Under the pieces are notes generated by a model. It saw only the letters and a list, made by a program, of their open reading frames with translations, had not been told where the DNA came from and did not search any database. Both the position numbers and the translations under genes were made by a program. A DNA stretch of 64,000 bases, taken from Octopus sinensis (taxonomy: Eukaryota). Every line of letters starts with the position of its first letter. Within the stretch, counting starts at the first letter, position 1. Below, piece after piece: positions 396 through 63,421 of this stretch. The stretch is taken from the NCBI RefSeq assembly GCF_006345805.1, contig NC_043011.1, forward strand, positions 22,022,464 through 22,086,463, in the 5' to 3' direction.

Positions 396-1359
396 GCTAC
401 AAATTCCGTTCTGGAGATTTTTCACTCAAAGATGACCAATGTTCTGGTCGACCTACTGAAGTCGATGATGAACCGAATCAAAGCCATCATTGAATCTGAT
501 TGTCAAATTTACGAGAGGTTGCAGATAGGTTAAATGTATCACACACAACAACAGAAAATTACTTAAAATGTCTTAGACTCATTAAGAAGCTCGATATTTG
601 GGTTCCACATAAATCGAAAGAGATTCACTTAACACAACAGACCAATATTTACAATATGCATCTCAAACACAATGAAATCAACTTTTTTTTTTTTTTAAGT
701 GAATCCTCACTGGGGATTGAAAATGGATTGTCTACAATAACATCAATCGGAAACGATCATGGTCCAAGCATAATGAACCAGCACAAACCACATCAAAGCT
801 AAATTGCATCAAAAAAGGTCATGCTGTCAATTTGATGGGATTACAAAAATGTTGTGTATTTTGAGCTACTTCCAAGGAATCAAACGATTAATTTAGGTTT
901 TTACTGTCAATAACTAATGAAACTGGAGGAAACAATCAAAGAAAAACAGCCAGAATTGGCAAATTGTAAAAGCATTGTATTCCACCATGACAACGCCAGA
1001 CCACACACATCTTTGCTAACTCGTGAAAAATTATTGCTGCTTGATTGGGAAGTGATGTCACATCCACCATATAGCCTTGACCTTGCACCATCAGATTACC
1101 ATTTATTTCGAAGTTTGCAAAATTCTTTGAAGGGTAAAACTTTCAATAATGATGATGACCTGAAATCACACTTGCTTCAGTTTTTGGCTAAGAACCAGAA
1201 GTTCTATGGGTGCAGAATCATGAAGTTGCCAGAAAGATGGTAATGGGTCATCGAACAAAATGAAAAATATATAACTGATTAAAGTTCATTCTTTGTATAA
1301 AAAAAAAATGCCTTTTCTTTCACAGTAAAAAACCGAAATTACTTTCTTGCTAACCCAAT
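396..1359 (+). mobile_element. mariner transposon remnant, 5'-truncated, frameshifted transposase
   Basis: ORFs 500..802 (KKLDIWVPH) and 917..1243 (FHHDNARPH, HPPYSLDLAPSDYHLF); 3' TIR aaccgaaattactttcttgctaacccaa + TA. Confidence 0.9.
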
Positions 1360-12056: not shown

Positions 12057-13312
12057 TCAGATCATTAAGAATGAAATATCCAATTTTCTTATGCACCAAG
12101 TTTGACAGTCATCAACTCTAATGTTTTATCCTGACAATTCTTTGTTTTACAACATTGAAGAGTTACATCATCACTTTTTGAAATGCAATTCATGGTGTCT
12201 GATTATATTGTGAGTTTTCTCTTGTAAATCAATTTTTGTGAACCCATGGATAGATCAAAAATTCATGTTGTTTATGAATATGAATTCCATCATGGAATCA
12301 ATACATCCCAGATAGCTTGAAACATCAATGAGGTGTTTGGTGAAGATGTGGCAAATGAGCACACTGTGTGTCGAATGTTTGAGAAGTTCTGGTCTGGTGA
12401 CTTTACTCTTGACAAATTAGCCCCATGGTAGACCTGAGACTAAGGTGGATAATGATGAACCAGAAACTGTAGTGGAAGCAGATACATGTCAAATTATACA
12501 TGAGTTAGCTGCAAGGTTTGATGTTTCAATTCCAACTGTATTGGACCATCTGAAACAAATCAGCAAGGTAAAAAAGCTGGACAAGTGTACTACACAAACT
12601 GAACATGTCATCTTGAAACTTGCTGTTCTTTGTTGTTGTAGCATAAAAGCGAACCATTTTTGCATTGTATTGTTATGTGTGAAGAAAAATGGATTCTTTT
12701 CAAAAATAGCGAGCATTCTGCATGGTGGTCAGATAGAGATGAAGTGCCAAAACACAATCCAAAAAAGAATATCAAAAAAAGCTAATGGTGTCTGTTTGGT
12801 GGTCCAGCGCTGGTGTCCTCCACTACAGCTTCATGAGACCTGGTAAGTCAATTACAGCAGATGTATACACCAACAAACTGGATGAAATGATGAGTGAACT
12901 TGCAATTAAACAACTGAGATTGGTCAATAGTGACAGGCCATTTCTCTTGCAAATCAATGCTCGACCACAAGTTGCTCAAAGAACACTACCCAAATTACAG
13001 GAACTGAACTTGAAAGTACTCAGTCATACATCATATTCACCAGACCCTGCACCTGCTGACTATCACGTTTTCCAGGCATTAAACAACTTTTTGCAAGGAA
13101 AAAACTTTAAATCTGAAGAAGATGCAAAAACAGCCCTTCCTGATTTCATCACCTCTTGCTCTCCAGAATTCTTTACTGCCAGCTACTGATAAAATGGCAA
13201 AAGTGTGTTGATAATTTAAGTGCATACTTTGATTAACTGCATTGCTTTTAATTGAGATAAAATGAAATAAACTTTCAGTTAAAAATCAGACATTTCGTTT
13301 TTAATGACCTGA
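12057..13312 (+). mobile_element. full-length decayed mariner transposon (1256 bp)
   Basis: TIRs tcagatcattaagaatgaaat / atttcgtttttaatgacctga, TA on both sides; ORFs 12445..12846 and 12785..13189 (MVSVWWS, NARP, YSPDPAPADYHVF). Confidence 0.92.
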
Positions 13313-41305: not shown

Positions 41306-41407
41306 GACATGGGTTTGCATAACAAAACTGGCAGTGGCAGCCTTGCAATGACATTCTACAGCCCTTATTGGATGATAAATAAAACTGGACAGGATCTATT
41401 CTACAAA
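41306..41407 (+). CDS. VPS13: VPS13 exon y (DMGLH...FYSPYWMINKTGQDLFYK)
   Basis: tgcag acceptor, GTAAGT donor, phase 0/0; VAB repeat motif. Confidence 0.93.
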
Positions 41408-43171
41408 GTAAGTACTTGCAAAATGGAATTTTTTTATCCAATACTTCTGCTCCAACTAACATTAATAAGGAGCTGTCTTCATTTAGATTCATTTAAAAAG
41501 TATTTGCTAAACTGATCTAACTACTGGGACTCAAAATAATGTGGTTATTGCAGATTACTGAAATTATTATATGAAAAGCAAATTCATTATTGTTATCTAA
41601 GAAGCCATGGCTTCAATTAGTCTCTAGTTAAGGTTCCTGCTATCTTTAATGGTTAAGTTGTTATTCATTAATTGCTGAAAAGGCAAATGTTGTTATAATT
41701 TAAATACTCTCTCTCTCTCTCCCCTTAAAGTAAATAAGGTATTCAAACATGTAAATATGGCCCCTAAATTTAACTCAAGAATATATATTAGTAACAATGC
41801 AAACAGAAATGGGAAAGATGAAGTTAATTTAATTGTTGAAAAACTTTCTAACTTGTTTAACAATACTGACACTTCAAAAATTAAATAAATTGTTTTACTG
41901 TGACTTAGAAGAAGAAAAGTCAATATTTGCCAACACAGATGATCATTAGTTGTCTTGGATCCTTCTGTTTTACTTCTTTGTCTAACAATAATTCACCTGA
42001 ACAGTCTAAGATAAGTAATTTCTTTAAGTCATTCAGTATCCATTTGGAGTTTGAATGGATGAACATATTTATTTCCATCTGTTCTGGATATCAGCCAAGT
42101 TCCTTTTTCAGCAATTACCAAAAATAACACTGTTTTGTAGGTATCTGAGATAAACCTTTCCAGTTGCTGTTTTGTTGGTGATAAATTCCAAGATCCTCAA
42201 TCATTGGTATGATACAGTCTATCCTTGTGTGTCTGTGTGAGGGTGTAGCTTTGGTGTAGTTATGTTGGTTTAAATGTTCACCTTGCTGTTGTCTGCAGAT
42301 CTACACATTTCTGTAGCATGTATCTATATAGTTATCCACTGTGGTGTAGATGGAAGACTGAGACAAACTGGTATTTGGTGCTTAATATTAACTTATCAAT
42401 TTTAAAGTCTAAGAATTATTCTGCTATAATAAATTTACTGTAATCATTCGATAAAATTTGGTTGTTTTTTATATTTCTATTTTAAGTTCTAGAAAGCTTT
42501 AGAAATGTTCAGGATACATATTCAGTGTACCTCTAACGGGGTCATCCCATTTAGAACTGATTAGACAGATTAACGACCATTTTCATTAACAAGAAGACAA
42601 AATAGACTTTATATCATATCGCACATTTAATACATCATATATTGTGATTCCACTTCAAATTTTTGAGTGCTTCACGAATTTTGTACTTTATATATATATA
42701 TCTTTTATCTTTTACTAGTTTCAGTCATTAGACTCAGCCATACTGGGACGCTGCCTTGGACAAATTGACTTTTAGTCAAATGAATCAACCCTAGTGCTTA
42801 CATTTTTTGTTAAGCGTGATACTTATACTATTGGTATCTTTTGCTAAACCACTAAGATATGGGGGATGTAAACACACCAACACCAGTTGTCAAGCACTGG
42901 TAGAGGACAAACACAGCCACAAAGACACACACACACATACAATGGGCTTCTTTCCGTTTCTGTCTACCAAATTCACTCAAAAGGCCTTGATCAACCCATG
43001 GCTGTAGTAGAAAACACTTGCCGAAGGTGTCACACAGTAGAGCTGAAACCAGAACCATGTGGTTGGAAAGCAAGCTTCTTCCACAATATGTATATTGTAC
43101 TGTTCCATTATTGGTAGGATCTATATAAAAAGTACTTCAGTCAGTGAAAGATACTTGTTTATTATACACAT

Positions 43172-47652: not shown

Positions 47653-47736
47653 TCTACAGAAAGTACTGATGTAATAAAACATCCTTCAGATTTGAGAGAT
47701 GCTATACTTTTTTCTTTTAAATCCAAATCTAAGAAG
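47653..47736 (+). CDS. VPS13: VPS13 exon z (STESTDVIKHPSDLRDAILFSFKSKSKK)
   Basis: long pyrimidine tract + cag, AAG|GTAAGG donor, phase 0/0; resembles vertebrate HP..FRD.ILFSFK. Confidence 0.9.
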
Positions 47737-48317
47737 GTAAGGCATATTTCAAACCTATATATTTTTTTATTGCCTGTTTTCAAAAAATGAAATTCATATT
47801 AGACATGCTATGCTAATTTGCTAACAATACTTGTTTCTTTACCTTAATACAGATGTGGATTGAACAAAACTGTTCATTAAATTTGTAGAGAATGATTCCA
47901 ATTAAAAACAAACTTTCAAGTTTTGTTTTAACTTCCAAGTTTTCATTATAGTGGTGTATTCACTTATATCTGCAAAAATTCAGTCTGATAAATATATAAA
48001 GCTTAGATAATACCTGGTTATTTGTGCAAAGATATATACATATATATCATTGCTATTATGTTAAACTGTCATATGTCCAAATTTGGCCAAATGCATTTCT
48101 TTTTAAATATTTATTTTTGCTTGCAATAGCTGGTCCTTTTGATCAAACTATCGTGTTTCCAGCTGCTTCAGATGCCAAGATATCAAAAGTTGTCAAAGTG
48201 TAGTACAACAGTTTTGCTATGGAATGGTGAAACTATTTTTTTCTTTCTCTGAAAAAGCAACATCTTGGACTTACGACACTTTTGCATAATAGTAACGATA
48301 TATATATATATATATAT

Positions 48318-48351
<34 letters not shown>

Positions 48352-48926
48352 CACACACACACACACACAGATATTATATTAGTTAGTGATATTTTTCTTG
48401 GTGTAAATCCCTTGCTTTTATTTAGCAGACTTGCAGGTAATTTTTTTTATAAAATGTGTACTAATTTAGCTGTCTGTTCAGATAAGTTGGTTGGCATGTA
48501 ATCATTCTGTAGTTGGGTAAGTTGTTCTCTAGATGTTGCACTTACAGCAGATAGTCAAGAATTATATTATATAATAACGTCTTGTTTTACAGTGGCTGAG
48601 AAGAAAATGCAAAATTTCATTTTGCAATTTCCTTTGCCATCAGCATTCAGATTCTAAGTGTCCAGTTTTCAAGAACTTGAACTTTAAAGTTGAATCATAT
48701 AAAAAAAATTAATTTTTTTCCTTCTTTTTCAATTCAAATAAAAATGAAAAAATTCTTGGCTATAGCTCTATGAAGTAACTGTGTGTATTGTGTAATAATT
48801 TAGTTTGATTGTTGATCTGTTTGTATATGTTTTCTTGTTATTGAAAACGTCTTAGTCAAAAGCTTGGACAATTTCTTTGGTGTTAGTTTTGTTTCCATTT
48901 TTGTTGACCCTCCCTTTACTTAATAG

Positions 48927-48935
48927 TTCATGGAA
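48927..48935 (+). CDS. VPS13: candidate 9-nt VPS13 microexon (FME)
   Basis: ccctccctttacttaatag|TTCATGGAA|gtaagt; phase 0/0. Confidence 0.4.
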
Positions 48936-49212
48936 GTAAGTAGATTTGTTTCAGTATGTAAAGAACATCGAATCTCATTTCACATTGTTAGATGAGAACA
49001 CAATTACTGACCAAAAGAATTGAGTTTTTAATTTTTGTTTCAGGTTGGCTGATATGTAACCAGTCGATCAACTCATTTATTTGGATTATTTTTTCTTTAA
49101 TTTATTGTCCAAGTTGTCATTAATGTAATAACTTAACACTGTGTTTATTTTATTTTATTTTATTTTCTGTTATTTCACTTTATTTCTAAATCACTCCTAA
49201 CTGTGTACCTAG

Positions 49213-49320
49213 GTACACAAGGAAAAAGAAGGAAAAGGTTGGGATAAAGGGGACGAGAAAGAGAAAAAAGAGAAGGACAAAAAAAATCCCAAAGTGAAGG
49301 AGTGGCGCCAACATGGTAAA
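49213..49320 (+). CDS. VPS13: candidate 108-nt VPS13 cassette exon (VHKEKEGKGWDKGDEKEKKEKDKKNPKVKEWRQHGK)
   Basis: pyrimidine tract ...gtacctag acceptor, AAA|GTAAGT donor, phase 0/0, open frame, purine-rich island in AT-rich intron. Confidence 0.65.
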
Positions 49321-51346
49321 GTAAGTGCCAGTTTGATGATGTTGTTCCTAGACTGCTGACCTTTGGTTGATACAGCAACTGAGTATTGTCCCCTTGTTCG
49401 CTAACTCACAATTTGTTTCATTCTGTTCTACTGATCACTGCCAATTCTGATGTCAGCAGCTTTGAGATTGATTGGTTTTATCTCTAAGCAATGAGGTGTA
49501 TCAGCAAGGTTTTGTATGGGATCTAAACAATCATATCTTCAAACTAAAAATCTAACTAAATCTGAGAAGTCACTGTCTAAATACAATTTGTAATTCTGGA
49601 ATATGTTGGTGAAAATATTTCCTATAATCAATGTTTTGTTTTTGTTTTGTACTTTTTTTTAACTATATAGTAGTTTTTAAAACACTTAAATACTGATAAT
49701 AAAAATATTGGACTGCATCCAAATGAAGCATAGCATAGAATGAGTGCTGAAAGAGTTGCAGATTTCGTAATCCTTAGTCTAGGTATGAATTGATACAAAC
49801 TTTTGGAGAATTAGATATTATATTTGACTGGAAATTCAACTGCCCTAATGATTGGAAGTGTGACTTCATAATAGAGGATGGAGGGATTTTTGTCCTACAA
49901 AGGAATGGAGATTACAAACAGAATTAGTAGTGTAAAACAAAAAACCAAATTACCTTCACTTTCTTCAAATATCTTTCTAATTTGTCACAATTTGTTTTCC
50001 AACAATATTTTTTTTTCTTAACTGCCTTAACCACATCCTTGAGGAAAGCATTCCTTTATTCTTTCAAACAAATGGAGGGATTTGAGTACTTAATGAGTAG
50101 CAGGACATAAATTCATTGCCAACAAAACTACTGTAGTCTCTCCATGTTTTCAAAATTTATCTAGATAAATTAGAATGTGTTATAGAATATTTATCCTATC
50201 ATTAGTTTAGAAAGAGGTATATTGTTGATCAAACTGAACTTGTTTCTTAAGAAATTTTTATTGATTATTCTACTTGATAGACATATCTTCCACCACTTCT
50301 AATCCATCATGTATACATGTCCATAAAAGTATATTGAATAGAAAATAGCAATGATTATCAATCTATTCAATACAAATGGAACTGCTCTTCTTTTTATAGT
50401 AATCTGCTATTTGTTAAAGTTTAAAGAGTAACTATTATTTCTATTAAGTAAAAAACATTGTAATTATTTATAATCGTGTTATCTATAACTTCTCATACTA
50501 AATAATCATTTCGAATTTTGGTGTAAGATCAGCAATTTTAGGGGGACGAGGTTAGTTGATTACATCAACCCCAGTATTTAACTGGTACTTTATCTTATCG
50601 ACTCTGGAGGGATGAAAGACAAAGTCAACCTCAGTGGAATTTAAATTCAAAACATGGAAAGCCAGAAGAAATGCTACTAAGCATTTTGTCTGACACATTA
50701 ACAATTCTTCCAGCTCACTGCTTTTCTCATAGTATGTAGTAAAAGCAATAACAGCAGAATCCAAACTGTGTGTACATCATTTAAGTCAAGGCCAATGTGG
50801 TAACTTGGGCTTTTGGTATGATACTCCTCCTGGTATAGCTAATGTCTTTCCTCAGCATCTCCACATATATTATCTACCAAGCACATGTGGCATTACTATG
50901 TATAAACTTCCAGAGGATAAACCTTGAAGCAATGACATGGTGGCATAATCTGTGGACAGTGAACCTCAGTCTCTCCTTTGTCAAATCTTTGTGGTTACCT
51001 ATGGTAGACCAGTACAAAGGTCAACATTGGTCATGTTTCTCATCCATGAGATAGATGCCCAGAGCCATATGATGCAAGATTCTGGTGTAGCACTCATCCA
51101 GCAAGTTCTCCTTGGCAATGTAAATTTTTAAACTTAGTTTTAAAAATATGAACTGAAGAAAATTAACACACAAAGCTAATCAGGTTTTATATATAAAGCA
51201 AACTAACTTCAAGTTAACAAAGTAATGTTGATAAAATTTGCAGCCCAACACCCGCAAAGTCTTTTATCTAAAAAGAAAGATTTATGTTGGTTTAGTTCAT
51301 GAAAAAAGTTCCGTTTTATTATCTTTCCTTGACAAATAAAAAATTA

Positions 51347-51555
51347 AACAATGCTTGCTTTAGAATGTAGGAGAGAAAATTTTAACTTGAATTTAATTAC
51401 ATACTTTTAGTGATTGAAGTTCATTTGACTGTAGAAAGTATCTATTTGATCAGCATTAACAATGCTTGCTTTAGAATATAGGAAAGAAAATTTTAACTTG
51501 AATTTAAAAACATGTTTTTAGTCATTGAGGTTTCTCAGATTCTAGAAAGTATATA
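51347..51555 (+). repeat. ~110-bp tandem duplication
   Basis: aacaatgcttgctttagaat..aaaattttaacttgaattta x2. Confidence 0.85.
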
Positions 51556-54500
51556 CCTTACCCTCATTAACTACCAATTGTCTGGCTGATTTGCTGTTAT
51601 TTTCTTGCTGACTTGTTCTGTTATTTCTGCATGACCTCTTTCTTATGTGTCTTCCTATGTGAATTGCTTTTAATGTGAAGAATCTAATTATACAACTATG
51701 AGCATATCCAACTGCTTTGACCACTCCTGTTGACCTGTTATACCTTAACTGTACAGAACCAATGGAGCATGAGAATCTGTGGTATATCTTCCAAACCCTA
51801 TAATTACAAAATTTCCAACTAAAATATTCTGGTTTTGATCAAAGGGTATTAATCAGAGCAGCATTACTCAATGTTTGTGCTTATTTATCTTTTATTTTTT
51901 GTTTTTCCTTGTTTCAGTCATTCAACTGAGTTCATGCAGGGCATTGCCTTGAAGGGCTTTGTCATATAAATTGACCCCAGTACCTGTTTTAATATCTGCT
52001 ACTTTGTCTATTTGTCTCTTTTGCCAAACCTTTAAGTTATGGGGATGTAAACAAACCAACTCTGGTTGTTAAGCAGTCGGGTGGACAAACACAGATACAC
52101 ACACACATGTATGATGGGCTTCCACAGTTTCCATCTACCAAATTTTCTCACAAGGCATTGGTTGATCCAGAGCTGTAATACAAGACACTTGCTCAAGGTA
52201 CCATGCAGTGGGACTGAACCTGAAACCATGTGGTTGCAAAGTGAGCTTTTTGACCACTCTGTCATTTCTATACCCATTTTCCTATACATTTTCATTAATA
52301 CATTAGGCTTAGAGGTTAAGTGAAACTACAGGTTAGAAAGCATTATGTTTTTAACTGCTGCTTCCATAATTTGAATCTAATAATAAATATAACAGTAGGT
52401 TTAACCTTTTAACATTCCGATTACTCTATCAAGTGTAATGCTTATTTATCCACATTGTTTTGAATTAATCATATATGATCTCATAGCTTCAAGATTTCAA
52501 TGATGTGATTGTTTATTTTTAGAATGGTATTGTAGGGTAAGTGTGAAAGGCTAGATCTGGCCAGTTTGCACATAAAACAGGTAGAATAATTGGGCCTGAT
52601 ATGGCTAGTTTAAATACTAAAGTGTTAAAGTATCAGAATAGTAAACATTGGATTATATTAGCATTCTGTTAAGTTTCTCTTTCAAGTAAGAAATATATAT
52701 CTAGCTTCACTTATAAAATCTTTTATTTCACTATTGATAATAGACAATTGTTTTATTTATTCCTTATAATATTGTTACAAGCGTTGCCTTATTGGCACTT
52801 ATGCCTATGCTAGTAGGGTGCCAAGAGCACCATTCAAGCGTGATCGTTGCCGGAGCAGCCAAATGGCACATAAAAGGGCACCATTCGAGCGTGATCATTA
52901 CCAACATCGCTTCGCTGGCACGTGTAAAAAGATTCGAGCAAGGTCATTGCCAGTACTGCCTGACTGGCACGTAAAAAGCACCCACTACACTCTCGGAGTG
53001 GTTGACATTAGGAAGGGCATCCAGCTGTAGAAACTCTGCCAGATCAAGATTGGAGCCTGGTGCAGCCATCTGGCTCGCCAGCCCTCAGTCAAAATCGTCC
53101 AACCCATGCTAGCATGGAAAGTGGACGTTAAACGAGGATGATGATGATGATGAATACCAGAGATTTTTAATTAAAGATTTTGCAAAGATTTTTAATTAAA
53201 CATTTTGTAAGAGTGGATGTTATTAGTTTAGTTTGGAAGAATGGGCTGTATCTATGGCTTTCAGCTGTTCTCTGAAACCGGTGAGATCAATATAGTTAGC
53301 ATTCCTTTTGAACAGTTGTAAGTTAATGGCTTTGGGAATTATAGAGAGTTGAGGGGTTTTGTTGAGGAGAGCAAAAGACTGGGTGTAATGGTTAGTGAAG
53401 GGACAACTGGGGAGAAGAACATTATGGCTGATAGGAATTGTACTCAATTTTTGTGATAATTTTAATTATCATCATTGTTTTAACATCCACTTTTTCCATG
53501 CTTGTATAGGTTGGATGGTGTCTATTGAGGCAGATTTTCTATGGCCAAATGTCCTTCTTGTCACTAACCCTTGTCTATTTCTAAGCAAGGTAATATTTCC
53601 CCATGGTCAGACATGCTTTTGCAGAATATTGGAAATGGACATTCATTTACAACAATCACACAGTGTCAAAACAGGGAGACACAAGCATACACACACACAC
53701 ATGACAAGCTTCTTTCAGTTTTCATCTACCAATATGACTCACATGGCTTTGGTTGGCCTTGATGCTACACAGTGGGACTCAACCTGAGATCATGTGGTTG
53801 GGAAACAAACTTCTTACCACACACCCATGCCTGCATCTAATATTTCAAACATTTTCACATTTTCTAAAGATGACTTGTCATTGTACAAATATATATTATT
53901 GCCACTTAATAATATCTACCATCTGAATATTAAATATTTAAGAACTGGATTCAGTATCTTCTTATGAGGAAAAGAGATCCCATGTTTGGTTAAGCTTCAA
54001 ATGTAGTCAACTTATAATTAGATAGCCTTGGTGTAAGTTTAATATTATATATTAAAAAAAAAAAATTTCTATGAAGGAGAGAAAAATCAGTTTTTTGGTT
54101 ATGTCAAAAATATAAAACCTAAATGTAGTTATACCCTCTTATCTCTGATTTCTAACAAAATTCTCTCTCTGATTGTTGTTTCACATAAATTAATTTGTCA
54201 TTACTAAAATTTATAGCAGCAACTAAATCAAAGTAGATAATATTTAATTGCATCAGTCAAGGAAAGAAAATCCAAGTTAAAAATGCTAACAGTTGTTACT
54301 AAATAGCACTTTAGTTTTTCATCTCTCTGTCTAATCCTTTAGATAAATCAACTTCGTGTTAATTTAAAGTTGTTGTTCCTGTTTAAATCAGCTCTGTTAA
54401 AGCTGACTTTATAATCTAGTCATAAGGACTACATCAATCTCTCTAATTTTTTACAACAGTAGGGCAGTGGTTCTTAGTTTTTTTTTTCCGTTTATTCACA

Positions 54501-55451
54501 ACACACACTCAAGAAAAAATGTATTAATCCTTTTGATACCAATCTGTTTGAGACTATCCCTGGTTTTGTTACACAAACTTCCTTTTTTTAAATGACCTAA
54601 TCTACAATCTTCCAACAAAATTTCATATTAATTTATGTTTCAAACACCAGCTTAATAATGTCAAAGTTATTTTACAAAATTCTTCCTTTTTTATTTTTAT
54701 CATTTGCAACAAAGGCAATGTATTTCAATAGAAACATGGTAACAAAAGGATTAGGAAAATTTTACAAATTTCCACCTATAGTTAAAATTTAAATTGCCTA
54801 AAAAAAAAGGGTAGTAATAACTTCTTCATTCAATAATTGCCATGCTAGTGTCATGAGACACTGTTTGGAAATCGCTGCAGTGACATTTTGTTTGAGGGAG
54901 ATTTAGCTACTATTTCTCGCAGGTTGAGCAACTTGATTTCAATGAAAAGCTACAAGATTTTTTTCTATTTCACATATAATTTCCCTGAATCACCAAAAGG
55001 AAAGTTGTATTCTTGTGACTTTCCAATTTTTAAAAACAAATATTAGAAATGAAACCATGTTGAATTATGTTCATAAATGAGAAATTCTTAATTTGTTGGA
55101 TAGGGATTTTGAAAGCAATTTAATTTTTTTGTTTGTTTTTTGATGCTTAAGATATTTCAATTTTACTGTATGGTTATTTGCTTGTGTTATTGCTATAAAT
55201 CCTTGTTTATCACTGAAAATAAACTGCTAATTGACAAATATAATTTTTGCTTTTACACCTTATCTAGGATAACTTCTGATTTCAATTTTGTTTATACTTT
55301 TATCGCTTAGATATATGCACCTGTACAAAATTTTTGCACTAAGATTTTTGCCACTATATTACACTCATGCTTCTTATTTTCAGTGGTAAAATATTGACTA
55401 AACTCAAGATTTAGTAACATTTGTATTAATATTATACATACATACATACAC

Positions 55452-55535
<84 letters not shown>

Positions 55536-55727
55536 TCCTCCTCTCTGTTAGGAGGCACAAGCACTTACACACACAATGGAAGCTTCCAGCCACCAAATTC
55601 AATTCAAGACTTCAGTCAGCCTAAGGCTATAGCAGAAGACACTTACCCAAGGTGCCATGCAGTGGGGCTGAACTAAAAACCATGTGGCTGAGAAGCAAAC
55701 TCCCTAACCACACAGCCATGCCTGTGC

Positions 55728-55804
<77 letters not shown>

Positions 55805-55836
55805 ATATATATGAGAGAGTACAATTAAACAGAAGC

Positions 55837-56062
55837 TTCAGTTAAACTCTTTATTATACCATAAATTACATAACCTTTACACATGTTTCACTAGTGTGTA
55901 CTTGTATGGTAATCCTTATAGATAGTTATATAATTACCTTGAAACACCAGATCTTCTGGCAGTCATCTAGGTACTGATTGCCATGCGACATACTAATATA
56001 TGCTAGTGAAATATGTGTAAAGATTATGTAATTCATGACATATAATAAAGAGTTTAATTGAA
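55837..56062. repeat. diverged fold-back inverted repeat
   Basis: ttcagttaaactctttattata / tataataaagagtttaattgaa; tacacatgtttcactag / ctagtgaaatatgtgta. Confidence 0.8.
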
Positions 56063-56758
56063 CCCCCTGTTTTATTCTGCTCTCATAATGTAAAACCAGA
56101 AGAAATGCAGCTAAGCATTTTGTCTGCCATTCTAATGATTCTGCTAGCTCACTACCTTAGCTTGACTAAGAATAATGTTACAGAAATCTTGTATAAAGTG
56201 ATGTTTCAAGCTAAATGACATTTAGTTAAAATTTATTGAATTGTAAGTCATCATAAATCTGTGATATGATCTTAAAATAAACACTGATATATATTTAGCA
56301 ACCCAAAAACTCATAGATTACATGCAGTGACTAGGTGACAGTTCACATGCTGAAAATTTTGGTACCCTGTAACAAATAATAAATGCTTAAGTGTATTTTG
56401 GGATGGTTAACATGTGTCATCCATGCTGCAGTTGTACATTGATATAGAGAACTCTAATGAAGTACAAAATAGTTGGGTTGAGGTCAACCATTTGGATTAT
56501 TAAAAAGGAATACCATTTCTATTAGTATTAGGCACTATTATTGTAATCAAACACCAACAACACTCTCTCTTAACTTAGTATCGTAGTAATAAAATACATT
56601 TAGGAATTATCCAAGGTTCAGAAAAGAAAGATTACAACAAAACAATGTTTTTAAAATTATATTTTTTCTTCAGCCATCATCTAATTGGAAAATCTAGCTA
56701 TTTAGAGCCAATGTAATTTTCATTTAATATATTGCTGCTTTCTTGTGCTTTTTCTCAG

Positions 56759-56788
56759 ACTTCTGAAACAGAACGTGTATTTTCAAAG
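56759..56788 (+). CDS. VPS13: candidate 30-nt VPS13 microexon (TSETERVFSK)
   Basis: ttgctgctttcttgtgctttttctcag acceptor, AAG|GTAAAC donor, phase 0/0. Confidence 0.55.
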
Positions 56789-59414
56789 GTAAACTAACGA
56801 ACACACGCACTTATGCAGTAATTTCCTCAATCACTTATGATGGAACCTCGTCTACTGCACTCAATAGTTTTGAGTATAACTCCTCAAACCAACAGAAACT
56901 TTCTGTTGGTCATCATATATATTTTCTCTCTCCCTCCTTCCCTCTCTCACCCCACATCAAGATTTTATATTCATTTGTAAGACTACTTGCCTTCTAAGCC
57001 ACAAACAGCTAGTGGCTTCTACTTTTCTCTACCATTATTCTCAGTCAGTAGCCTCCTTAGCTCATACTCATGTACTCTGCTCATGCCCAACAGCCATCAC
57101 CTTTCTCATTCACTTTCACCATCTACTAAGGTAATGCTTTATGCCTATTCTCTTCAAATCCAAAGACCTTAATCTTTCTCATGTACTCTCCCATTACATG
57201 GAACTATACATGACTGCACTCCTATCTTGTCAATAAATATTTTTCAATAATATAACATATAAATGCTCTCGATATCAGTTTAGTTACCACAATATTTCCC
57301 ATTACTTCTTTTCTCTTTCTGCTCCTCCCAGAGAACCTCCCTAAAAACACTACTGCACACTTCCTGTAAATTATGCATGCATAAGAGTTGGTATTTGGAA
57401 CAACTTTTTATTCTCTTTTCTGGTATATGGTGTTTTGTACTGATTATCAATCATTGATTAAAAGCTACATGTATATACATGTTCTGTATGTTTCTTTTGT
57501 ACATTAGTTGGTTTGGTGAGAAGGATGGCACATAGAGGTAACTGATCAAGGTTAATGGAATAAATGTGTACTCTGAACTCTTATAGGTTAATGTTCATAA
57601 GAAAAACATACATAAAAAAAATGGAGGATCTCAGTGTTCTTAGAGTCTTTTTTGCTCCATCTTTGATTTAAAAAAAAAATGTGCACTCCATCATGAATTG
57701 GAAAGACTGATATGTAGCCTATAAATTTCAAAAAACGTTTTAATCAAAACTTTATTGCAAGATTTATTAACTTGTTATTTACATACACTGCATTCTGATG
57801 TAACCCTTCCCCACCAAAATACTGCCATGCCCTACCTTGGGAAACACTTGTCTAAAAGTATGCAACTTTGAAAGGTTATAAAACTTATATAGCTAGGCAT
57901 TCTGTTGTTTCCATGTTCTGCAGTACAGCAACTAATGTATAAACAAATTATCATTTAACACTATGATGTTATATGTAGAGTACCTGACATTTAAGCATCT
58001 ATCAGATCAAATGCCCCTTTTAATTCATAGGTCATGGGGTTTTATAAGTCAGAGCAAAAAATATATAGCTATATTAAGATAATCCTTTTAAAAGAGAGAG
58101 AGTCCAAAATGTTGGGCATTTCTCTTCCTCTAAGTTAATATATCTAATGATTTTGTTTTAACTCCTTGATTAAGATCACCCCTTGTCTCCTGATATTCTA
58201 GTGATTTATATTAGATATTTCAGTTCTCGGTCCTAGTCATTTCACTTTTATTAATACCCTTTAGAACACATTATATTGATTATTTTAGGTATTAAAATCT
58301 ATTTTATCATGTGTTCTGGTTGGGGATTTTTAAGCCATAACATGCTATGGTGTCATCATTCTGTGTCATGAGAGTATGTGGAAATGGTTTACTATCACCT
58401 TCTCTGGATAGACATGAAGATTAGAATTTTTAGAAAGTAAAATATGTTGTCCTGAATAAGGAAATGATTGAAAATTGAAATCTCTCCTTCATGGACCCAG
58501 CTTACTCACCTAGAATCATAGATCCTATTGTCATGGATTTTTCTTATCTTGCATGTAACATACAGACAGGAATATTGCTTGACAACTGTCAATCAGCTCC
58601 ACTAGTCTTGGAAAACCTGCAAAGGCATTGGGTGCTGTCCCTTCCTCTTCACCTAGCAAGTAAAAAAGAAAGGAAAAGATAACAGCATGGAAGCTTTATT
58701 ATATATTTTGAATGTATTGCAGCCAATTATAGAATTAAAATGATACTTCTTAAAGCTTGTGTAGAAACACTTCTGTTCCACAATGCCATGGTCTTAGTAA
58801 TAGCAGAAATACACCCGCAGAAGAGATAAATGCTGAACATTGATGTCTTTTATGAGTTTCATTTACAAAATATATAATGTTATGTATATAATCTTCCAGT
58901 ATTATATATGTTTGTAGAATTACTTTAGTTTTGTTAATTCTTAAATCTTCTTTGAAATGTTTAATAATCTCATAAGTAATTACAATTTCATTTTATTTTA
59001 AATTCAGTTAAATTAGTTAAAATATGATTTAAGAATTTTTTGTGTGTGTACATATACACACATTATATATATATATATTCTAAGTATGGCTGTCTTTTTA
59101 AGAAAGAGAACTCAACACATGTGTACAATTTATTGAGATGAAACCAGTCAATAACTGGGAAGAAATCTAACTTCAATACCCTCAATGAAAAGTGTGTGTG
59201 TGTGCACATGTGGTGTTTGTAAAGGGGCAAGGTATATAACTTAGTAGTTTTTATGATGAGGATTCAGTTGAATTACCTGCTCAGTGAATTAGCGTACAAG
59301 CAGCTGACCATTCTGCAGATATGTGTACCTGCCTTTAAAGCAATCTTCAAGGAGGATCAACATGACACAATGTGTGACATGACAATACCATCCAGCAGGT
59401 GTATACATATATGA

Positions 59415-59513
59415 AAATTCTTTAACACATCTTTAATGTTTCTTTACAATTGTGTCTGTTCAGTTAGTACAGAAACAATTGTAACAAATCATTAAAGATG
59501 TGTTAAAGAATTT
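59415..59513. repeat. 99-bp hairpin
   Basis: aaattctttaacacatctttaatg / cattaaagatgtgttaaagaattt perfect 24-bp outer stem. Confidence 0.9.
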
Positions 59514-59712
59514 GTTTTGTCTTCTTATCATCTGGATTATTTACTCTTCGCCAAATCCTCTTTATAGAGAAATCATTTTGAAATTTGGATTTTCTACACC
59601 TGAGAAATTTCAGCTTTGGCTTGGAACCCAACAGTGTTGATAGCCTAGTATTCAAGTTGACTGCTTTTCTGAAAATTACCCTAACTTTACACACTACCAG
59701 ACCTTATATATA

Positions 59713-59773
<61 letters not shown>

Positions 59774-61780
59774 AGATAGATATGAGAAATTATGATAAAC
59801 TCGAGTTTATATCGTTTGTTCCTATGTATGCTTCGCTATTGTAGTTGTTTAGAACTCTGCATTGGATGTTCCAAGTGCAATTGGATGCTTAACCACAATG
59901 GATCATCTGAGGAACACTTTATTGCATTATGTTACAGAGATCTAATGTCTAAAAACGGTGTTTATTGTAATTTCTCCTACATTTTCTCTGTATGCTATGA
60001 TAAAGTAGTGTTACTAAGTACAGTAGTGGACAAACCATTCTACTGGAAGCAGACTCCATGATGATAATCTTCATAGAACTCTAAACCCAACAGTAGCAGT
60101 CATACATATATATGTATGTTTTATATATATATATACTTACATATCTATACACACACACACTCATATACAACATATGCATGCATATTTCACTGTTTTTATA
60201 TGAATTTGAAGTGTGAGTTATACTGTCAATTATTACTGAATTATCATGCTATAAATTTCCTCCTGTTAAAAATAGTATTTATTTATATATATTTAGTCAA
60301 CCATGTTTTGTACCTGTTTTTTGCCTTTGTTCTTGGCTTTTTGCAACAAGCCCCCTTTCATTTCTGCTTTTTTTTATTCCTTCCATTTTGTTTTATTATA
60401 TGTTGTAGTGAAGATTATTATTGTAATTAAATTGCCTCTTTCTCTGCATGATGGTATTTTATATATTCATATTTTTATTATTGTGGTATTTTACAGTTGG
60501 GTATTGTTATTGTTATATTATTTAATGTTTGCACTTGGCTTTGTTCATTTTCTATCAGTTTTTTTTCTCTCAATCTTCTGTGCTTACTAAAATCACTAAT
60601 GATTTAATGAGCCCTGTAATCTTATATATGTAGAAGGTGTCCATAAATTATTTTTTCATCCTCTATGCTTCAAACTGTAAAGATAATTTATGAACACCCT
60701 CTGTGTGTGTGTGTGTTTGTGTGTGGTGTGTGTGTGTGTGTGTGTGTGCATTTATATAATACAGTTTGATTGTATTTCATTGTTTATTAATGTTTTGATT
60801 TTGTTTTTTGTTATATCTTACTAAAACTGAGATTATAACATACAAAGAAGTTTCAATGTTTAAATAAAAAAATAAAACTATCCTAAGCTTTATTATAACT
60901 TTTAACTTTTGAAATTTCCAAGTCTTTAAGGAATAAATTTGTTGACAATTTGTAAAATTGTATGTTGACAAATTCTTTTGAAAACACTAAACTCTACTAT
61001 TATCACTACTACTATTTCTTGTAAAGTAAATTTTTAGTAAATATACTTATCAATATTGTCACCTTAATTTCTAATTGAAATAAATCTTTAATTTATTGGA
61101 AATTCTAATTCAAAATTTACTCAGAATTTTATGGTGTTTTTGGAGTTTAGAAATGTTGTGAATGTTAAAAAAAAATCAATATTTTACCATTTACTTTGTG
61201 AATCAAATAACACTGTTTAAATATAATCATTAATCAGAACAACCCTATTGTAAATATAAATTTATTGAAAATATTTCATTCAATTCTAAAACAAAAAGCA
61301 ATTATTTGTTCACATCAATTTTACTTTATTTATAATATTTTTGTATTATTTCTTACAACAGTTGCTTATTAAATTTCTGAACAAATTGTAGTATTAATTC
61401 TCTGTTTCCAGGTATTTCAATGTAAGAATTAACTAATGGATTGAGTTTCGTTTTTTTTTTTTTAAATATTGAAGTTAAATTAACGCAGTAAAAAGATGGG
61501 ATATCTTAAACATTTCATTCATTATGAATCATTGCCATATATAAAAAAAAGTAATGTTTTTGTTAACATCTTTCCATGGTTTATTGATATCAGAAAGGAC
61601 GTCCAGTTATAATACACTACCTCAAAACGTCCCTTCTAATTTATTGCACTTAAAAATGATGGCAAATAATGGTGATGATAATGATGCTTTCTCATTAACG
61701 GAATTATCATAGACCATTCATGCAGGCCAATGATTCATAATGAAATCAAATGTTTCTTGATGTTATAGACATTTTCACTT

Positions 61781-61831
<51 letters not shown>

Positions 61832-61834
61832 CTC

Positions 61835-61868
<34 letters not shown>

Positions 61869-63313
61869 ATCTTTAGATGAAAATAATCTAACTTGTTCTG
61901 CAGTATTTGCAGTTACTTTGCCATGTAAAAGCATGGTGTTTTAAGACAAAGACCTAAAATTAAATCAAAATAACATAACAAATCTGCTGTATTAAATAAT
62001 TATTTGTAATTATTTTGTTGATGTTTAACCATTGCTAAATAGGTTAGGAAAGTATGGTAATGATTTTTTTTTTCTGTTTTAAACAATAAATAAATGTAAC
62101 AATCTTCTGAAGAAAACAGATTTTAACTCAAGCAAATTGAAATATGTCTGCAAGTGTCTAATAATGTGATAATTTTCCCATCTTAACTTCTGTTTTTGTC
62201 TGGAAAGTAACTTGCTGAATTTTACAATTGCAAATATTTCTTAACTTAAAAATTCTTGGGTGTATTGAAAGTCCTGAAATTGAAAGCAACAGGATTATCA
62301 CATCATTACAATGTACCATGCTCCACTGAAGCATCGTGGATTACATTCTACTTCTGTAACAGTGAACTGGCTGTCTCAAAAGAAAGGGATACTGTGACTC
62401 ATCCTCCATGTACCTCTCTCAGCATAGTGCAGCTGATTCTGAGACCAGGGTGGGGATTATCACTATGTGACAGAGACTTAATTTAGTGCTAAGGCCATTC
62501 CCTCTGGGGAAGAGGGATGGCCTACAAGATTCCTGTGCTGGTGCCACAAAAAAAAGCACTTGTGTTGGTGCCACTTAAAAGTGCTTATTTGGGTGCCACA
62601 TTAAAAACACCCAGCACATAGTGTAAAGTGGTTAGTGTTAGGAAGGGTATCAGGCTGTAGAAACCAAGCTAAGTGAGACTGGAACCTGGTGCAGTTCTCT
62701 AACTTGCCAACTCTGGTTCAAACTATCCAACTCAAGCCAGCATGGGAAATGGACATTGGAGGAGGAGGAGGAGGAGGATTGACCTCATTAGGATTTGAAC
62801 TCAGGACACAAAGAGCTTGAACAAATACTGATGTAGTGACATTTCTGCCAATCAGTAACATAGGTAGCATATTCTCAGTAAAAATACATAAAAATAAGTG
62901 ACTATTTCCAGGATACTGATCAGACACTCAAATTCAATGCCAAGACTTCATATATCAGAGGAATTTTATTGTTTGCTTGTAAATTTTTGATCCTGATCTC
63001 CATTCTAGAGATATATACAAACAGAATTAGCTGTGATTATTCAATATCAATAAGTAGTGTTCAAAATATTATCTTAAGTGAAGCAAATAATCAGAATGTA
63101 ATGATTTTACTTTTTTCCTTTTCATAGATCTTTCAGTTTTCACCACCAAATTTTTATAGCCATCCTTTTGTTCTTTTTTCATCTCTTCCTCTCTCCTCTC
63201 TCTCTATCACTTTGACCCAAAGATCAATTGAAAATCATAAATTAATAACCATAAATCATAATTCATAAATTAAATTTTTACTATAGAATTTTTGAATTCT
63301 TTTTTATTTTTAG

Positions 63314-63421
63314 GCTTGTCTCCAAGTTGCAGAGTCTGAATGGTCTGACAAGTTTTCACTGGATACTGTCGGAAGCTCTGGTACCGTTCAGTGCAAGAAC
63401 AAAGCTTCTGGAATCTATGAA
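63314..63421 (+). CDS. VPS13: VPS13 exon aa (ACLQVAESEWSDKFSLDTVGSSGTVQCK...YE)
   Basis: poly-T tag acceptor, GTAAAT donor, phase 0/0; WS..FSLDTVGS motif. Confidence 0.92.

What the first reader, a model, noticed from the sequence alone, without database searches (positions are those of the whole stretch)
47737..63313. Hidden cassette-exon array in the giant intron could build a modular loop in the VPS13 VAB domain
This intron (15.6 kb) is more than twice as long as any other here and falls between ...LFSFKSKSKK and ACLQV.... It contains three phase 0/0, stop-free exon candidates with good splice signals: 9 nt (FME), 108 nt (K/E-rich) and 30 nt (TSETERVFSK). Any subset keeps the frame, giving up to 8 loop variants at one position. 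The VAB domain is the established adaptor-binding module that sets VPS13 membrane contact-site targeting. Inference: a combinatorial splicing switch controlling VPS13 targeting, possibly tissue-specific.
Basis: partly seen in the sequence, partly recalled or inferred. Interest (0 to 1): 0.8.

Follow-up and report, generated by a model that had tools for sequence, protein, structure and literature searches.

The report
Conserved extra exons in octopod VPS13
The 15.6-kb "intron" of this octopod VPS13 lipid-transfer gene contains one genuine exon shared by molluscs that adds a highly charged loop to the adaptor-binding domain, and probably a second 30-base microexon. The proposed 9-base exon looks like chance, and nothing yet shows that these exons act as a switch.

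Summary
All three segments are in the sequence exactly as described (AG/GT borders, phase 0/0, no stops). Splice signals plus an open frame do not exceed chance: the same thresholds give 4 candidates on the sense strand, 4 on the antisense strand and 2.4±1.7 in shuffles. Conservation separates the three.

- **108-nt K/E-rich segment (49213-49320): a real exon.** Orthologous discrete phase-0/0 exons sit between the same two VAB-domain exons in Argonauta (octopod), Ruditapes (bivalve) and Patella (limpet). Pomacea and, partially, Dreissena proteins carry the insert too. All complete inserts end in KV(K/H)(E/V)(M/W)xQxGK. Among 84 proteins covering this loop, only molluscs have the insert.
- **30-nt segment (56759-56788): probably a real microexon.** It is the only other single-copy block of this intron conserved with Argonauta. 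Both splice sites are kept, and a 3-nt indel preserves the frame (TSETERVFSK vs ETESGIFSK). The Argonauta gene model does not include it.
- **9-nt FME: not supported.** It is not conserved and occurs at the chance rate.

The insert lies in VAB repeat 4, in a loop that AlphaFold models with low confidence. The mapped adaptor pocket is in repeats 5-6. Skipped gene models exist in Patella caerulea and Pomacea, but they could be homology-driven. Alternative use, tissue specificity and any effect on targeting remain untested.

The parts
47653..47736 (+). Exon z of the VPS13A/C-like gene (STESTDVIKHPSDLRDAILFSFKSKSKK), VAB repeat 4. Its donor is at 47737.
   Evidence: it aligns with human VPS13A/C and with Argonauta P0023. 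It is a block conserved with Argonauta.
49213..49320 (+). Genuine 108-nt K/E-rich exon (36 aa, 64% charged, net +5, tail KVKEWRQHGK). It is orthologous to discrete exons in Argonauta (102 nt), Ruditapes (111 nt) and Patella (69 nt).
49154..49429 (+). Block conserved with Argonauta around the 108-nt exon (72% over 293 columns). It includes about 59 nt of upstream and about 109 nt of downstream intron.
56759..56788 (+). Probable 30-nt microexon (TSETERVFSK). The Argonauta counterpart is 27 nt (ETESGIFSK), with the same acceptor tract and the same GTAAAC donor.
   Evidence: Single copy. Absent from the Argonauta gene model P0023.
48927..48935 (+). 9-nt 'FME' candidate. It is present in the sequence but has no support and is best read as a chance AG-N9-GTAAGT.
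63314..63421 (+). Exon aa (ACLQVAESEWSDKFSLDTVGSSGTVQCKNKASGIYE), the next constitutive exon, in VAB repeat 4.
42141..42206 (+). Outside the finding: a 66-nt exon-like block in the preceding intron (VSEINLSSCCFVGDKFQDPQSL). It is conserved, with AG/GT borders and an open phase-0/0 frame, in Argonauta (VSEVDIQSCCYIGDKFRDPQSL). It would insert 28 residues upstream in the same VAB repeat.
   Evidence: It is not in any protein model seen.

Best explanation
**Overall reading.** The 15.6-kb 'intron' is really two or three ordinary introns (1,476 + 7,438 + 6,525 nt).

**The 108-nt exon (shown).** Segment 49213-49320 is a genuine coding exon of a VPS13A/C-type gene. It is an old, apparently mollusc-specific exon lying between the same two VAB-domain exons in cephalopods, bivalves and gastropods.
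- It encodes 23-37 residues, 52-65% of them charged, net +2 to +6.
- Every complete insert ends in the conserved tail KV(K/H)(E/V)(M/W)xQxGK.

**Its structure (shown by modelling).** The insert is a low-confidence, probably flexible surface loop with one short helix. It sits between two beta-strands of VAB repeat 4, and the rest of the domain models with high confidence.

**The 30-nt segment (inferred from a two-species comparison).** Segment 56759-56788 is probably a real, unannotated microexon of octopods.

**The 9-nt FME segment.** This is a chance match.

**How it works (inferred).**
- The 108-nt exon has a weak 3' splice site in all four mollusc genomes examined and is 81% purine in this window. 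Its recognition probably depends on GAA/GAG-type exonic enhancers. That makes it regulatable, but no skipping has been demonstrated.
- At the protein level it adds a basic, polyampholyte arm to the side of the VAB arc, away from the PxP pocket in repeats 5-6.
- My best guess is an accessory electrostatic contact with a membrane or partner, or an intramolecular regulatory contact, rather than a change to the adaptor pocket itself.

**Component probabilities.** The 108-nt segment is a real exon: 0.93. It is appreciably skipped in some tissue: about 0.45. The 30-nt segment is a real exon: about 0.65. FME is real: about 0.05.
For: **Homologous insert at the identical junction.**
- Ruditapes P0009/P0017, Dreissena P0010, Argonauta P0023, Patella P0022/P0173 and Pomacea P0026 all carry it.
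- Alignment A5 shows invariant K, V, Q, G and K in the tail.

**Discrete phase-0/0 exons in genomic DNA.**
- Ruditapes L001:24789-24899.
- Argonauta L002:38840-38941.
- Patella L003:70645-70713.

**Octopod DNA comparison of the 108-nt exon.**
- About 50 central nucleotides are identical.
- A 6-nt indel keeps the frame.
- Both splice sites are conserved.

**Taxonomic distribution.**
- Only molluscs among 84 proteins covering the loop have the insert.
- The nearest non-mollusc hits lack it: insect, spider, horseshoe crab, hemichordate, crinoid and amphioxus isoforms X1-X8.

**30-nt segment.**
- It is one of only three collinear blocks in 64 kb that are not exons of the Argonauta model. The other two are an interspersed repeat and another exon-like block.
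- Local alignment score is 36, against 12.7±1.4 for shuffles.
- The acceptor tract and donor are essentially identical, and a 3-nt indel preserves the frame.
- The acceptor is strong in both species, scoring 4.8 and 8.6.

**FME.**
- Alignment score is 11, against 12.4±1.6 for shuffles.
- Its pattern occurs at the base rate.

**Structure.**
- The six conserved Asn residues place the site in repeat 4.
- In the AlphaFold model (mean pLDDT 83.7), insert residues 388-418 have pLDDT below 50 and lie between strands 380-382 and 424-429.
- The model matches the VAB crystal structure 7U8T (TM 0.77, E 9e-35).

**Weak acceptor of the 108-nt exon.** It scores -0.9 to -4.1 in four species, against a median of 2.9 for the window's exons.
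Against: - No transcript data for any cephalopod could be reached, so use of any of these exons in this species is inferred.
- The Argonauta model came from a pipeline that mixes RNA-seq, ab initio and homology evidence.
- The 30-nt microexon rests on one pairwise comparison, is absent from the Argonauta model, and has no counterpart in the limpet or clam loci.
- Conserved intron sequence next to exons is not unique to the 108-nt exon. Some constitutive exons also show about 60 nt of it.
- The skipped isoforms may come from protein-homology hints.
- The proposed function of the loop is pure inference. AlphaFold's low confidence is compatible with disorder but does not prove it.
Confidence: 0.7

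Rival explanations
1. Three independent cassette exons (9, 108 and 30 nt) are combined freely to give up to 8 loop variants. These act as a tissue-specific switch for VPS13 contact-site targeting.
For: - All three keep the frame.
- Two of the three are conserved.
- Skipped and included gene models exist in Patella caerulea and Pomacea.
- The VAB domain is the adaptor-binding module.
Against: - FME is not conserved and occurs at the chance rate.
- The site is in repeat 4, not in the adaptor pocket of repeats 5-6.
- No conserved neural-splicing motifs flank the exons.
- Most gene models examined include the 108-nt exon.
- No expression data are available.
Confidence: 0.07
2. The 108-nt exon is simply a constitutive exon of molluscan VPS13A/C that the first reader's gene model missed. 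The 30-nt conserved block is not an exon but a conserved intronic element, such as a splicing or transcriptional regulatory sequence. On this reading there is no alternative splicing at this position.
For: - All Ruditapes models, both Patella vulgata isoforms, the Pomacea XP model and the Argonauta model include the exon.
- The skipped models may come from BRAKER2 protein hints or from an older annotation.
- The Argonauta model lacks the 30-nt segment.
Against: - The 30-nt block is conserved most strongly at a polypyrimidine-AG and at a GTAAAC spaced 27 or 30 nt apart, with a 3-nt indel. That pattern is expected of an exon.
- Microexons are commonly missed by annotation pipelines (general knowledge).
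- The acceptor of the 108-nt exon is weak in four species, which is typical of regulated exons.
Confidence: 0.2
3. None of the segments is a real exon. All are chance open frames with chance splice-like signals in a long AT-rich intron.
For: - Signals plus an open frame are at the chance level: 4 sense, 4 antisense, 2.4±1.7 in shuffles.
- The purine-rich tract is trivially free of stops.
Against: - A protein-level homologue of the 108-nt exon lies at the same junction in five other mollusc lineages, three of them with discrete genomic exons.
- The 30-nt block is significantly conserved.
Confidence: 0.02

Closest known systems
Annotated molluscan VPS13A/C-like proteins that carry the insert: Argonauta hians GAB1605843.1, Patella vulgata XP_055955359.1/XP_055955360.1, Patella caerulea KAK6178554.1, Ruditapes philippinarum XP_060571316.1, Pomacea canaliculata XP_025082324.1
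   Same: - A K/E-rich insert sits at the identical junction (..FSFK..KKK | insert | A.L..E.EWSDKFSLD).
- The tail KV(K/H)(E/V)(M/W)xQxGK is the same.
- It is a discrete phase-0/0 exon with a weak acceptor.
   Different: - Length and N-terminal part vary (23-37 aa; the clam has three DTL(D/E)RKK repeats).
- Octopods have a shorter loop before it (FSFKSKSKK, lacking the usual x-F-F/L-F pair).
- None of these models contains the 30-nt or the 66-nt octopod blocks.
Human VPS13A and VPS13C VAB domains (PDB 9yg5_B, 9yqp_B) and the Chaetomium thermophilum VAB crystal structure (7U8T)
   Same: - Same domain, with six repeats each carrying a conserved Asn.
- Same strand-loop-strand at this site.
- The window's z|aa junction aligns directly across it.
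   Different: Human, arthropod and other deuterostome proteins have only a loop of about 10 residues (e.g. KKKNIFSKNK) and no K/E-rich insert.
Conserved frame-preserving microexons of bilaterian genes (the neural SRRM3/4 'eMIC' programme)
   Same: The 30-nt (27-nt in Argonauta) segment is very short, keeps the frame, lies in a surface loop of a folded domain, has strongly conserved flanking splice regions and is missed by annotation.
   Different: - UGC motifs lie close upstream of the 3' splice site in the window (-26, -23, -13) but none in Argonauta.
- No Rbfox sites are present.
- At 30 nt it is just above the usual limit of 27 nt.
- Neural specificity could not be tested.
Charged Lys/Glu-rich flexible inserts (polybasic membrane-contact loops, short ER/K-type helices)
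   Same: - 52-65% charged residues and a net positive charge.
- A short predicted helix over EKEKKEKDKK.
- Low model confidence.
   Different: - It is too short for a true ER/K single alpha-helix.
- No lipid- or partner-binding data exist.
- This resemblance comes from composition only, not from a test.

Membership tests
VPS13 adaptor-binding (VAB) domain of VPS13A/C-type bridge-like lipid transfer proteins | Sequence match to the curated VAB family and to solved VPS13 proteins | tested here: met
   - Pfam PF25036 VPS13_VAB: E 4e-19 for the window's exons and 2e-30 for Argonauta.
- The junction falls between profile positions 349 and 355 of 570.
- The best PDB sequence hits are human VPS13A (E 7e-35) and VPS13C (E 1e-32).
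VPS13 adaptor-binding (VAB) domain of VPS13A/C-type bridge-like lipid transfer proteins | Six repeats of about 100 residues, each with a conserved asparagine near its start (PMC7068118) | tested here: met
   In the 38-sequence alignment A4, the only conserved Asn columns are N12, N133, N252, N353, N486 and N586. The insertion at residues 390/391 lies between N353 and N486, which places it in repeat 4.
VPS13 adaptor-binding (VAB) domain of VPS13A/C-type bridge-like lipid transfer proteins | Fold: an arc of beta-sandwich repeats, as in PDB 7U8T | tested here: met
   - AlphaFold model mean pLDDT 83.7.
- Foldseek top hit 7u8t_B: E 8.6e-35, TM 0.77 normalised by target length.
VPS13 adaptor-binding (VAB) domain of VPS13A/C-type bridge-like lipid transfer proteins | The insertion touches the adaptor (PxP) binding site in repeats 5-6 | tested here: not met
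   The site is in repeat 4. The adaptor site maps to repeats 5-6 (PMC7068118). Distance in three dimensions was not measured.
Alternative cassette exon | A discrete exon with AG/GT borders whose length is a multiple of 3 in every orthologue | tested here: met
   Lengths are 108, 102, 111 and 69 nt in the window, Argonauta, Ruditapes and Patella. All are phase 0/0.
Alternative cassette exon | Both included and skipped mRNAs are observed | tested here: inconclusive
   - Patella caerulea has models with the exon (KAK6178553/4/6) and without it (KAK6178555/7) for one gene.
- Pomacea has XP_025082324 with it and PVD36340 without it.
- The annotation pipelines mix RNA-seq and protein-homology evidence.
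- No reads were examined, and nothing is available for cephalopods.
Alternative cassette exon | Weak splice site(s) and conserved flanking intron | tested here: met
   - Acceptor scores are -0.9 to -4.1 in four species, against a median of 2.9.
- About 59 nt of upstream and about 109 nt of downstream intron are conserved with Argonauta.
- Some constitutive exons have similar flanks.
Neural (SRRM3/4, eMIC-dependent) microexon | Length 3-27 nt and frame-preserving | tested here: inconclusive
   30 nt in the window and 27 nt in Argonauta, in frame in both.
Neural (SRRM3/4, eMIC-dependent) microexon | UGC-containing enhancer immediately upstream of the 3' splice site | tested here: inconclusive
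   UGC occurs at -26, -23 and -13 in the window, and nowhere in the last 40 nt in Argonauta.
Neural (SRRM3/4, eMIC-dependent) microexon | Inclusion restricted to neural tissue | not testable with these tools
   No cephalopod transcript data could be reached.
Recursive splice site / RS-exon in a long intron | The 3' splice site is followed directly by a sequence that rebuilds a 5' splice site (AG|GTRAGT) | tested here: not met
   The 30-nt block begins AG|ACTTCT in the window and AG|GAAACT in Argonauta. The 108-nt exon begins AG|GTACAC in the window but AG|GGGCAC in Argonauta.

The most novel reading that the evidence does not exclude
Molluscs evolved a dedicated charged module with a conserved KVKE(M/W)xQxGK tail in VAB repeat 4 of VPS13A/C. 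Octopods then added further small exons in the same repeat: the 30-nt exon here and the 66-nt block at 42141-42206. Regulated inclusion of these exons would give several surface variants of repeat 4. Those variants would tune membrane or partner contacts of the lipid bridge through a second site, independent of the PxP pocket in repeats 5-6.
Probability: 0.12. Interest if true: 0.55.

Novelty: new member of a known kind. Interest (0 to 1): 0.3.

Why it matters
VPS13 proteins move lipids in bulk between organelles, and mutations in the human paralogues cause neurological disease. How the VAB domain chooses partners in animals is only partly known. So far the mapped site is confined to repeats 5-6.

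A lineage-wide insert under protein-level constraint in repeat 4 points to a functional surface outside the known pocket. It also gives a natural with/without pair of constructs for testing that surface.

The practical consequences are smaller:
- The 'giant intron' is an artefact of missed exons.
- The 108-nt exon is already present in public mollusc gene models.
- The 30-nt and 66-nt octopod blocks are probable unannotated exons that annotators of cephalopod genomes could add.

It is a modest finding. It is not evidence for a combinatorial targeting switch.

Tried and rejected
**Word-indexed protein searches.**
- Searching with the all-inclusive peptide and with 411 aa of joined exons returned no cephalopod protein.
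- The profile search A5 did not even return its own input proteins.
- Cephalopod evidence came only from the exhaustive search.

**Routes to transcript or further genome data.**
- No route to cephalopod RNA-seq or transcript contigs was found.
- Two metagenome scans, one for the 30-nt block and one for the 108-nt exon core, found nothing.
- Two ENA contigs carrying an exon-aa homologue (L004, L005) had neither exon z nor a K/E-rich exon within 10 kb upstream, so they were uninformative.
- Dreissena P0010 is not on record as a gene position. The full-length Dreissena model P0020 has unrelated sequence fused at this junction.

**Tests that came out negative.**
- Splice-signal statistics were tried as a discriminator and rejected, because they sit at chance level.
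- The 4th chance candidate, 62423-62449, is not conserved.
- The intron has no ORF longer than 130 aa, and none was recognised as a transposon protein by eye; these ORFs were not searched.
- 1.9 kb of the intron is interspersed repeat, none of it overlapping the candidates.
- Rfam found nothing in 41400-64000.
- No Rbfox (GCATG) motif lies near the exons, and there is no conserved UGC motif.
- Recursive-splice-site readings were rejected.

**Literature.** No paper was found describing alternative exons in a VPS13 VAB domain of animals, or this insert.

**Not attempted.** A splice matrix trained on the window's own exons was not built. The matrix used is a generic one written from memory.


Full report
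**What is in the sequence.** The three proposed segments are at the stated coordinates with the stated translations and borders.
- Exon z is 47653-47736 and ends ...LFSFKSKSKK|GTAAGG.
- 48927-48935 is AG|TTCATGGAA|GTAAGT (FME).
- 49213-49320 is AG|GTACAC...GGTAAA|GTAAGT and encodes VHKEKEGKGWDKGDEKEKKEKDKKNPKVKEWRQHGK.
- 56759-56788 is AG|ACTTCT...TCAAAG|GTAAAC and encodes TSETERVFSK.
- Exon aa starts at 63314 (ACLQVAESEWSDKFSLD...).
- All three are phase 0/0.

**The gene and the site.**
- The gene is a VPS13A/C-type gene. Joined exons hit Pfam VPS13_VAB and VPS13_M.
- The best solved-structure hits are human VPS13A (9yg5_B) and VPS13C (9yqp_B).
- In those alignments the z|aa junction is collinear with the human proteins, which have only 4-5 more loop residues. 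No obligatory exon is therefore missing.

**Is it more than chance?** On splice signals and open frames alone, it is not.
- I used a generic donor/acceptor matrix written from memory, so it is approximate.
- The same thresholds give 4 candidates on the antisense strand and 2.4±1.7 in 100 dinucleotide shuffles.
- AG-N(6,9,12,15)-GTRAGT occurs 10 times on the + strand and 9 times on the - strand of the window. About two such microexon look-alikes are expected in 15.6 kb.
- The 108-nt segment is 81% purine with only 9 T's. Each of the three frames has a stop-free stretch overlapping it, so 'stop-free' says little there.
- Its acceptor is weak, scoring -1.2 against a median of 2.9 for the window's exons.

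**The 108-nt segment is a real, old exon.**
- A search with 411 aa of joined exons returned bivalve proteins with an insertion at exactly this junction. Ruditapes philippinarum has ...FSFKKNSLFSKKK[EDTLDRKKDTLDRKKDTLERKKDAKKQKVKEMKQSGK]ASLKMGEGDWSDKFSLD. Dreissena polymorpha has a partial one.
- An exhaustive search with the Ruditapes protein, followed by extraction of the loop, gave 84 proteins covering the site.
- Nearly all of these have a short loop with the common form KAKSFFGKKK. Insects, spiders, horseshoe crabs, a hemichordate, a crinoid, eight amphioxus isoforms and vertebrates do.
- Only molluscs carry a K/E-rich insert:
  - Argonauta hians: KSKSKK[GHRESKGWDKGDEKEKKEKDKKASKVKEWHQSGK]ASLQV. 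Most of its exons are about 70-90% identical to the window's.
  - Patella caerulea and P. vulgata: [KINSEKSDDKKAVKVKEMKQSGK].
  - Pomacea canaliculata: [DKEEGKHEGEKKSKDKVHVMKQAGK].
  - The two bivalves above.
- The aligned tails share invariant K-V...Q-G-K.
- In genomic DNA the insert is a separate phase-0/0 exon between the orthologous flanking exons:
  - Ruditapes L001:24789-24899, 111 nt.
  - Argonauta L002:38840-38941, 102 nt.
  - Patella L003:70645-70713, 69 nt.
- Against Argonauta, the window's exon has about 50 identical central nucleotides, a 6-nt in-frame indel and conserved splice sites. About 59 nt of upstream and about 109 nt of downstream intron are also conserved.

**The 30-nt segment is probably a real microexon.**
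- A window-versus-Argonauta comparison gives 27 collinear conserved blocks.
- 24 of these are exons of the Argonauta model, including the K/E exon.
- The other three are an interspersed repeat (52968-53193), an exon-like block at 42078-42269, and 56735-56804, which is centred on the 30-nt candidate.
- Its alignment shows a near-identical acceptor tract, CTTCTTGT(G/C)CTTTTTCTCAG.
- The 3' exon end and donor, TATTTTCAAAG|GTAAAC, are identical.
- A 3-nt indel gives 27 nt (ETESGIFSK) in Argonauta against 30 nt (TSETERVFSK) in the window.
- The local alignment score is 36, against 12.7±1.4 for shuffled queries.
- The block is single-copy.
- The acceptor is strong in both species.
- Against this, the segment is not in the Argonauta gene model. 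No counterpart was seen in the limpet or clam loci. The case rests on one species pair.
- The block does not have the AG|GT structure of a recursive splice site.

**The 9-nt FME segment has no support.**
- Its region aligns to the Argonauta intron no better than shuffled sequence: 11 against 12.4±1.6.
- No comparable AG-N9-GTRAG site exists in the Argonauta z-to-K/E intron.
- The same holds for the fourth chance candidate, 62423-62449.

**Where the insert sits.**
- The junction maps between positions 349 and 355 of the 570-position VAB profile.
- In a 38-sequence alignment, the only conserved asparagines of the Argonauta VAB fragment are N12, N133, N252, N353, N486 and N586. That is one per repeat, as described for VAB domains (PMC7068118).
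- The insertion at residues 390/391 is therefore in repeat 4.
- An AlphaFold model has mean pLDDT 83.7. Its top Foldseek hit is the VAB crystal structure 7U8T, with TM 0.77.
- The model places the insert between strands 380-382 and 424-429. pLDDT is below 50 over residues 388-418, and there is a short helix at 403-412.
- The adaptor (PxP) site was mapped to repeats 5-6. The insert is not in the known pocket.
- The inserts are 52-65% charged and net +2 to +6.

**Is it alternative?** This is unresolved.
- For alternative use:
  - The acceptor is weak in all four genomes, -0.9 to -4.1.
  - The exon is purine-rich.
  - Its length is always a multiple of 3.
  - Patella caerulea has models of one gene with the exon (KAK6178553/4/6) and without it (KAK6178555/7).
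  - Pomacea has one model of each kind.
- Against alternative use:
  - The P. caerulea annotation merges RNA-seq-guided and protein-homology-guided predictions (PMC11003540). The skipped forms may simply copy the insert-less metazoan proteins.
  - All Ruditapes models and both P. vulgata isoforms include the exon.
  - The Argonauta model comes from a mixed pipeline (PMC12682272).
  - No conserved Rbfox or UGC motifs flank the exons.
- With the two supported exons, the 'giant' intron becomes 1,476 + 7,438 + 6,525 nt. Those sizes are in line with the 6.2-kb neighbouring intron.

**Verdict.**
Both add residues to one loop of the VAB domain.
- The exon is already present in public mollusc gene models and may be the normal form.
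- The third exon is chance, and the site is outside the mapped adaptor pocket.
- The proposed combinatorial, tissue-specific targeting switch is untested.
- No literature on this insert was found.

Noticed in passing
window 42141-42206 (conserved block 42078-42269), in the intron between exon 41306-41407 and exon z: A 66-nt exon-like block, ttttgtag|GTATCT...CATTG|gtatga, encodes VSEINLSSCCFVGDKFQDPQSL. Argonauta (L002:32331-32396) keeps the AG/GT borders and an open phase-0/0 frame (VSEVDIQSCCYIGDKFRDPQSL). There are 15 differences, 5/3/7 by codon position. It is in no protein model seen, and no counterpart was found in the clam or limpet loci. It would insert 22 residues into VAB repeat 4, 28 residues before the site of the finding.
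   Followed up: partly
window exon z end, 47710-47736, versus other animals: Octopod exon z ends FSFKSKSKK and lacks the hydrophobic pair found in almost every other animal's loop (KAKSFFGKKK, KKNSLFSKKK, KKKNIFSKNK). The 30-nt microexon ends (V/I)FSK, so including it would put a similar motif just before the next strand. The spacing differs by two residues. This may be coincidence.
   Followed up: no
window 12743-13186 (+), and by eye 914-1240 (+): Mariner-type transposase remnants lie in introns. The first matches Pfam Transposase_1 (PF01359) at E 1e-17. The second carries HDNARPH...DLAPSDYHLF but gave no Pfam hit.
   Followed up: partly
window 50495-50724, 51874-52257, 52400-52629, 52965-53155, 53453-53846, 55581-55729, 56082-56160, 62530-62779: These interspersed repeats have other copies elsewhere in the window. 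They total 1.9 kb of the 15.6-kb intron. One family (about 52968-53193) also has several copies, on both strands, in the Argonauta intron. Several long TA/AC/TC microsatellites are present as well.
   Followed up: partly
P0020 (Dreissena polymorpha XP_052268371.1), residues from about 2254 onwards: The full-length Dreissena model continues from ...FSFKKSSLFNKKK into about 1,100 residues of unrelated sequence before VPS13 resumes. This looks like an annotation artefact in the orthologous large intron. A 127-residue sample of it gave no Pfam hit.
   Followed up: partly
P0001 (ENA contig of 1,942 bp, organism unknown): One open frame holds two tandem copies of the exon-aa motif (..SLQIATSDWSDKFSQDAVGIS.. 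then ..LLKIAASEWSDKFSLDTVGSSG..). This may be a tandem exon duplication in some other animal.
   Followed up: no
tools: The word-indexed protein search never returned cephalopod or long mollusc proteins that share many exact words with the queries, including its own query sequences. The exhaustive representative search did return them.
   Followed up: no
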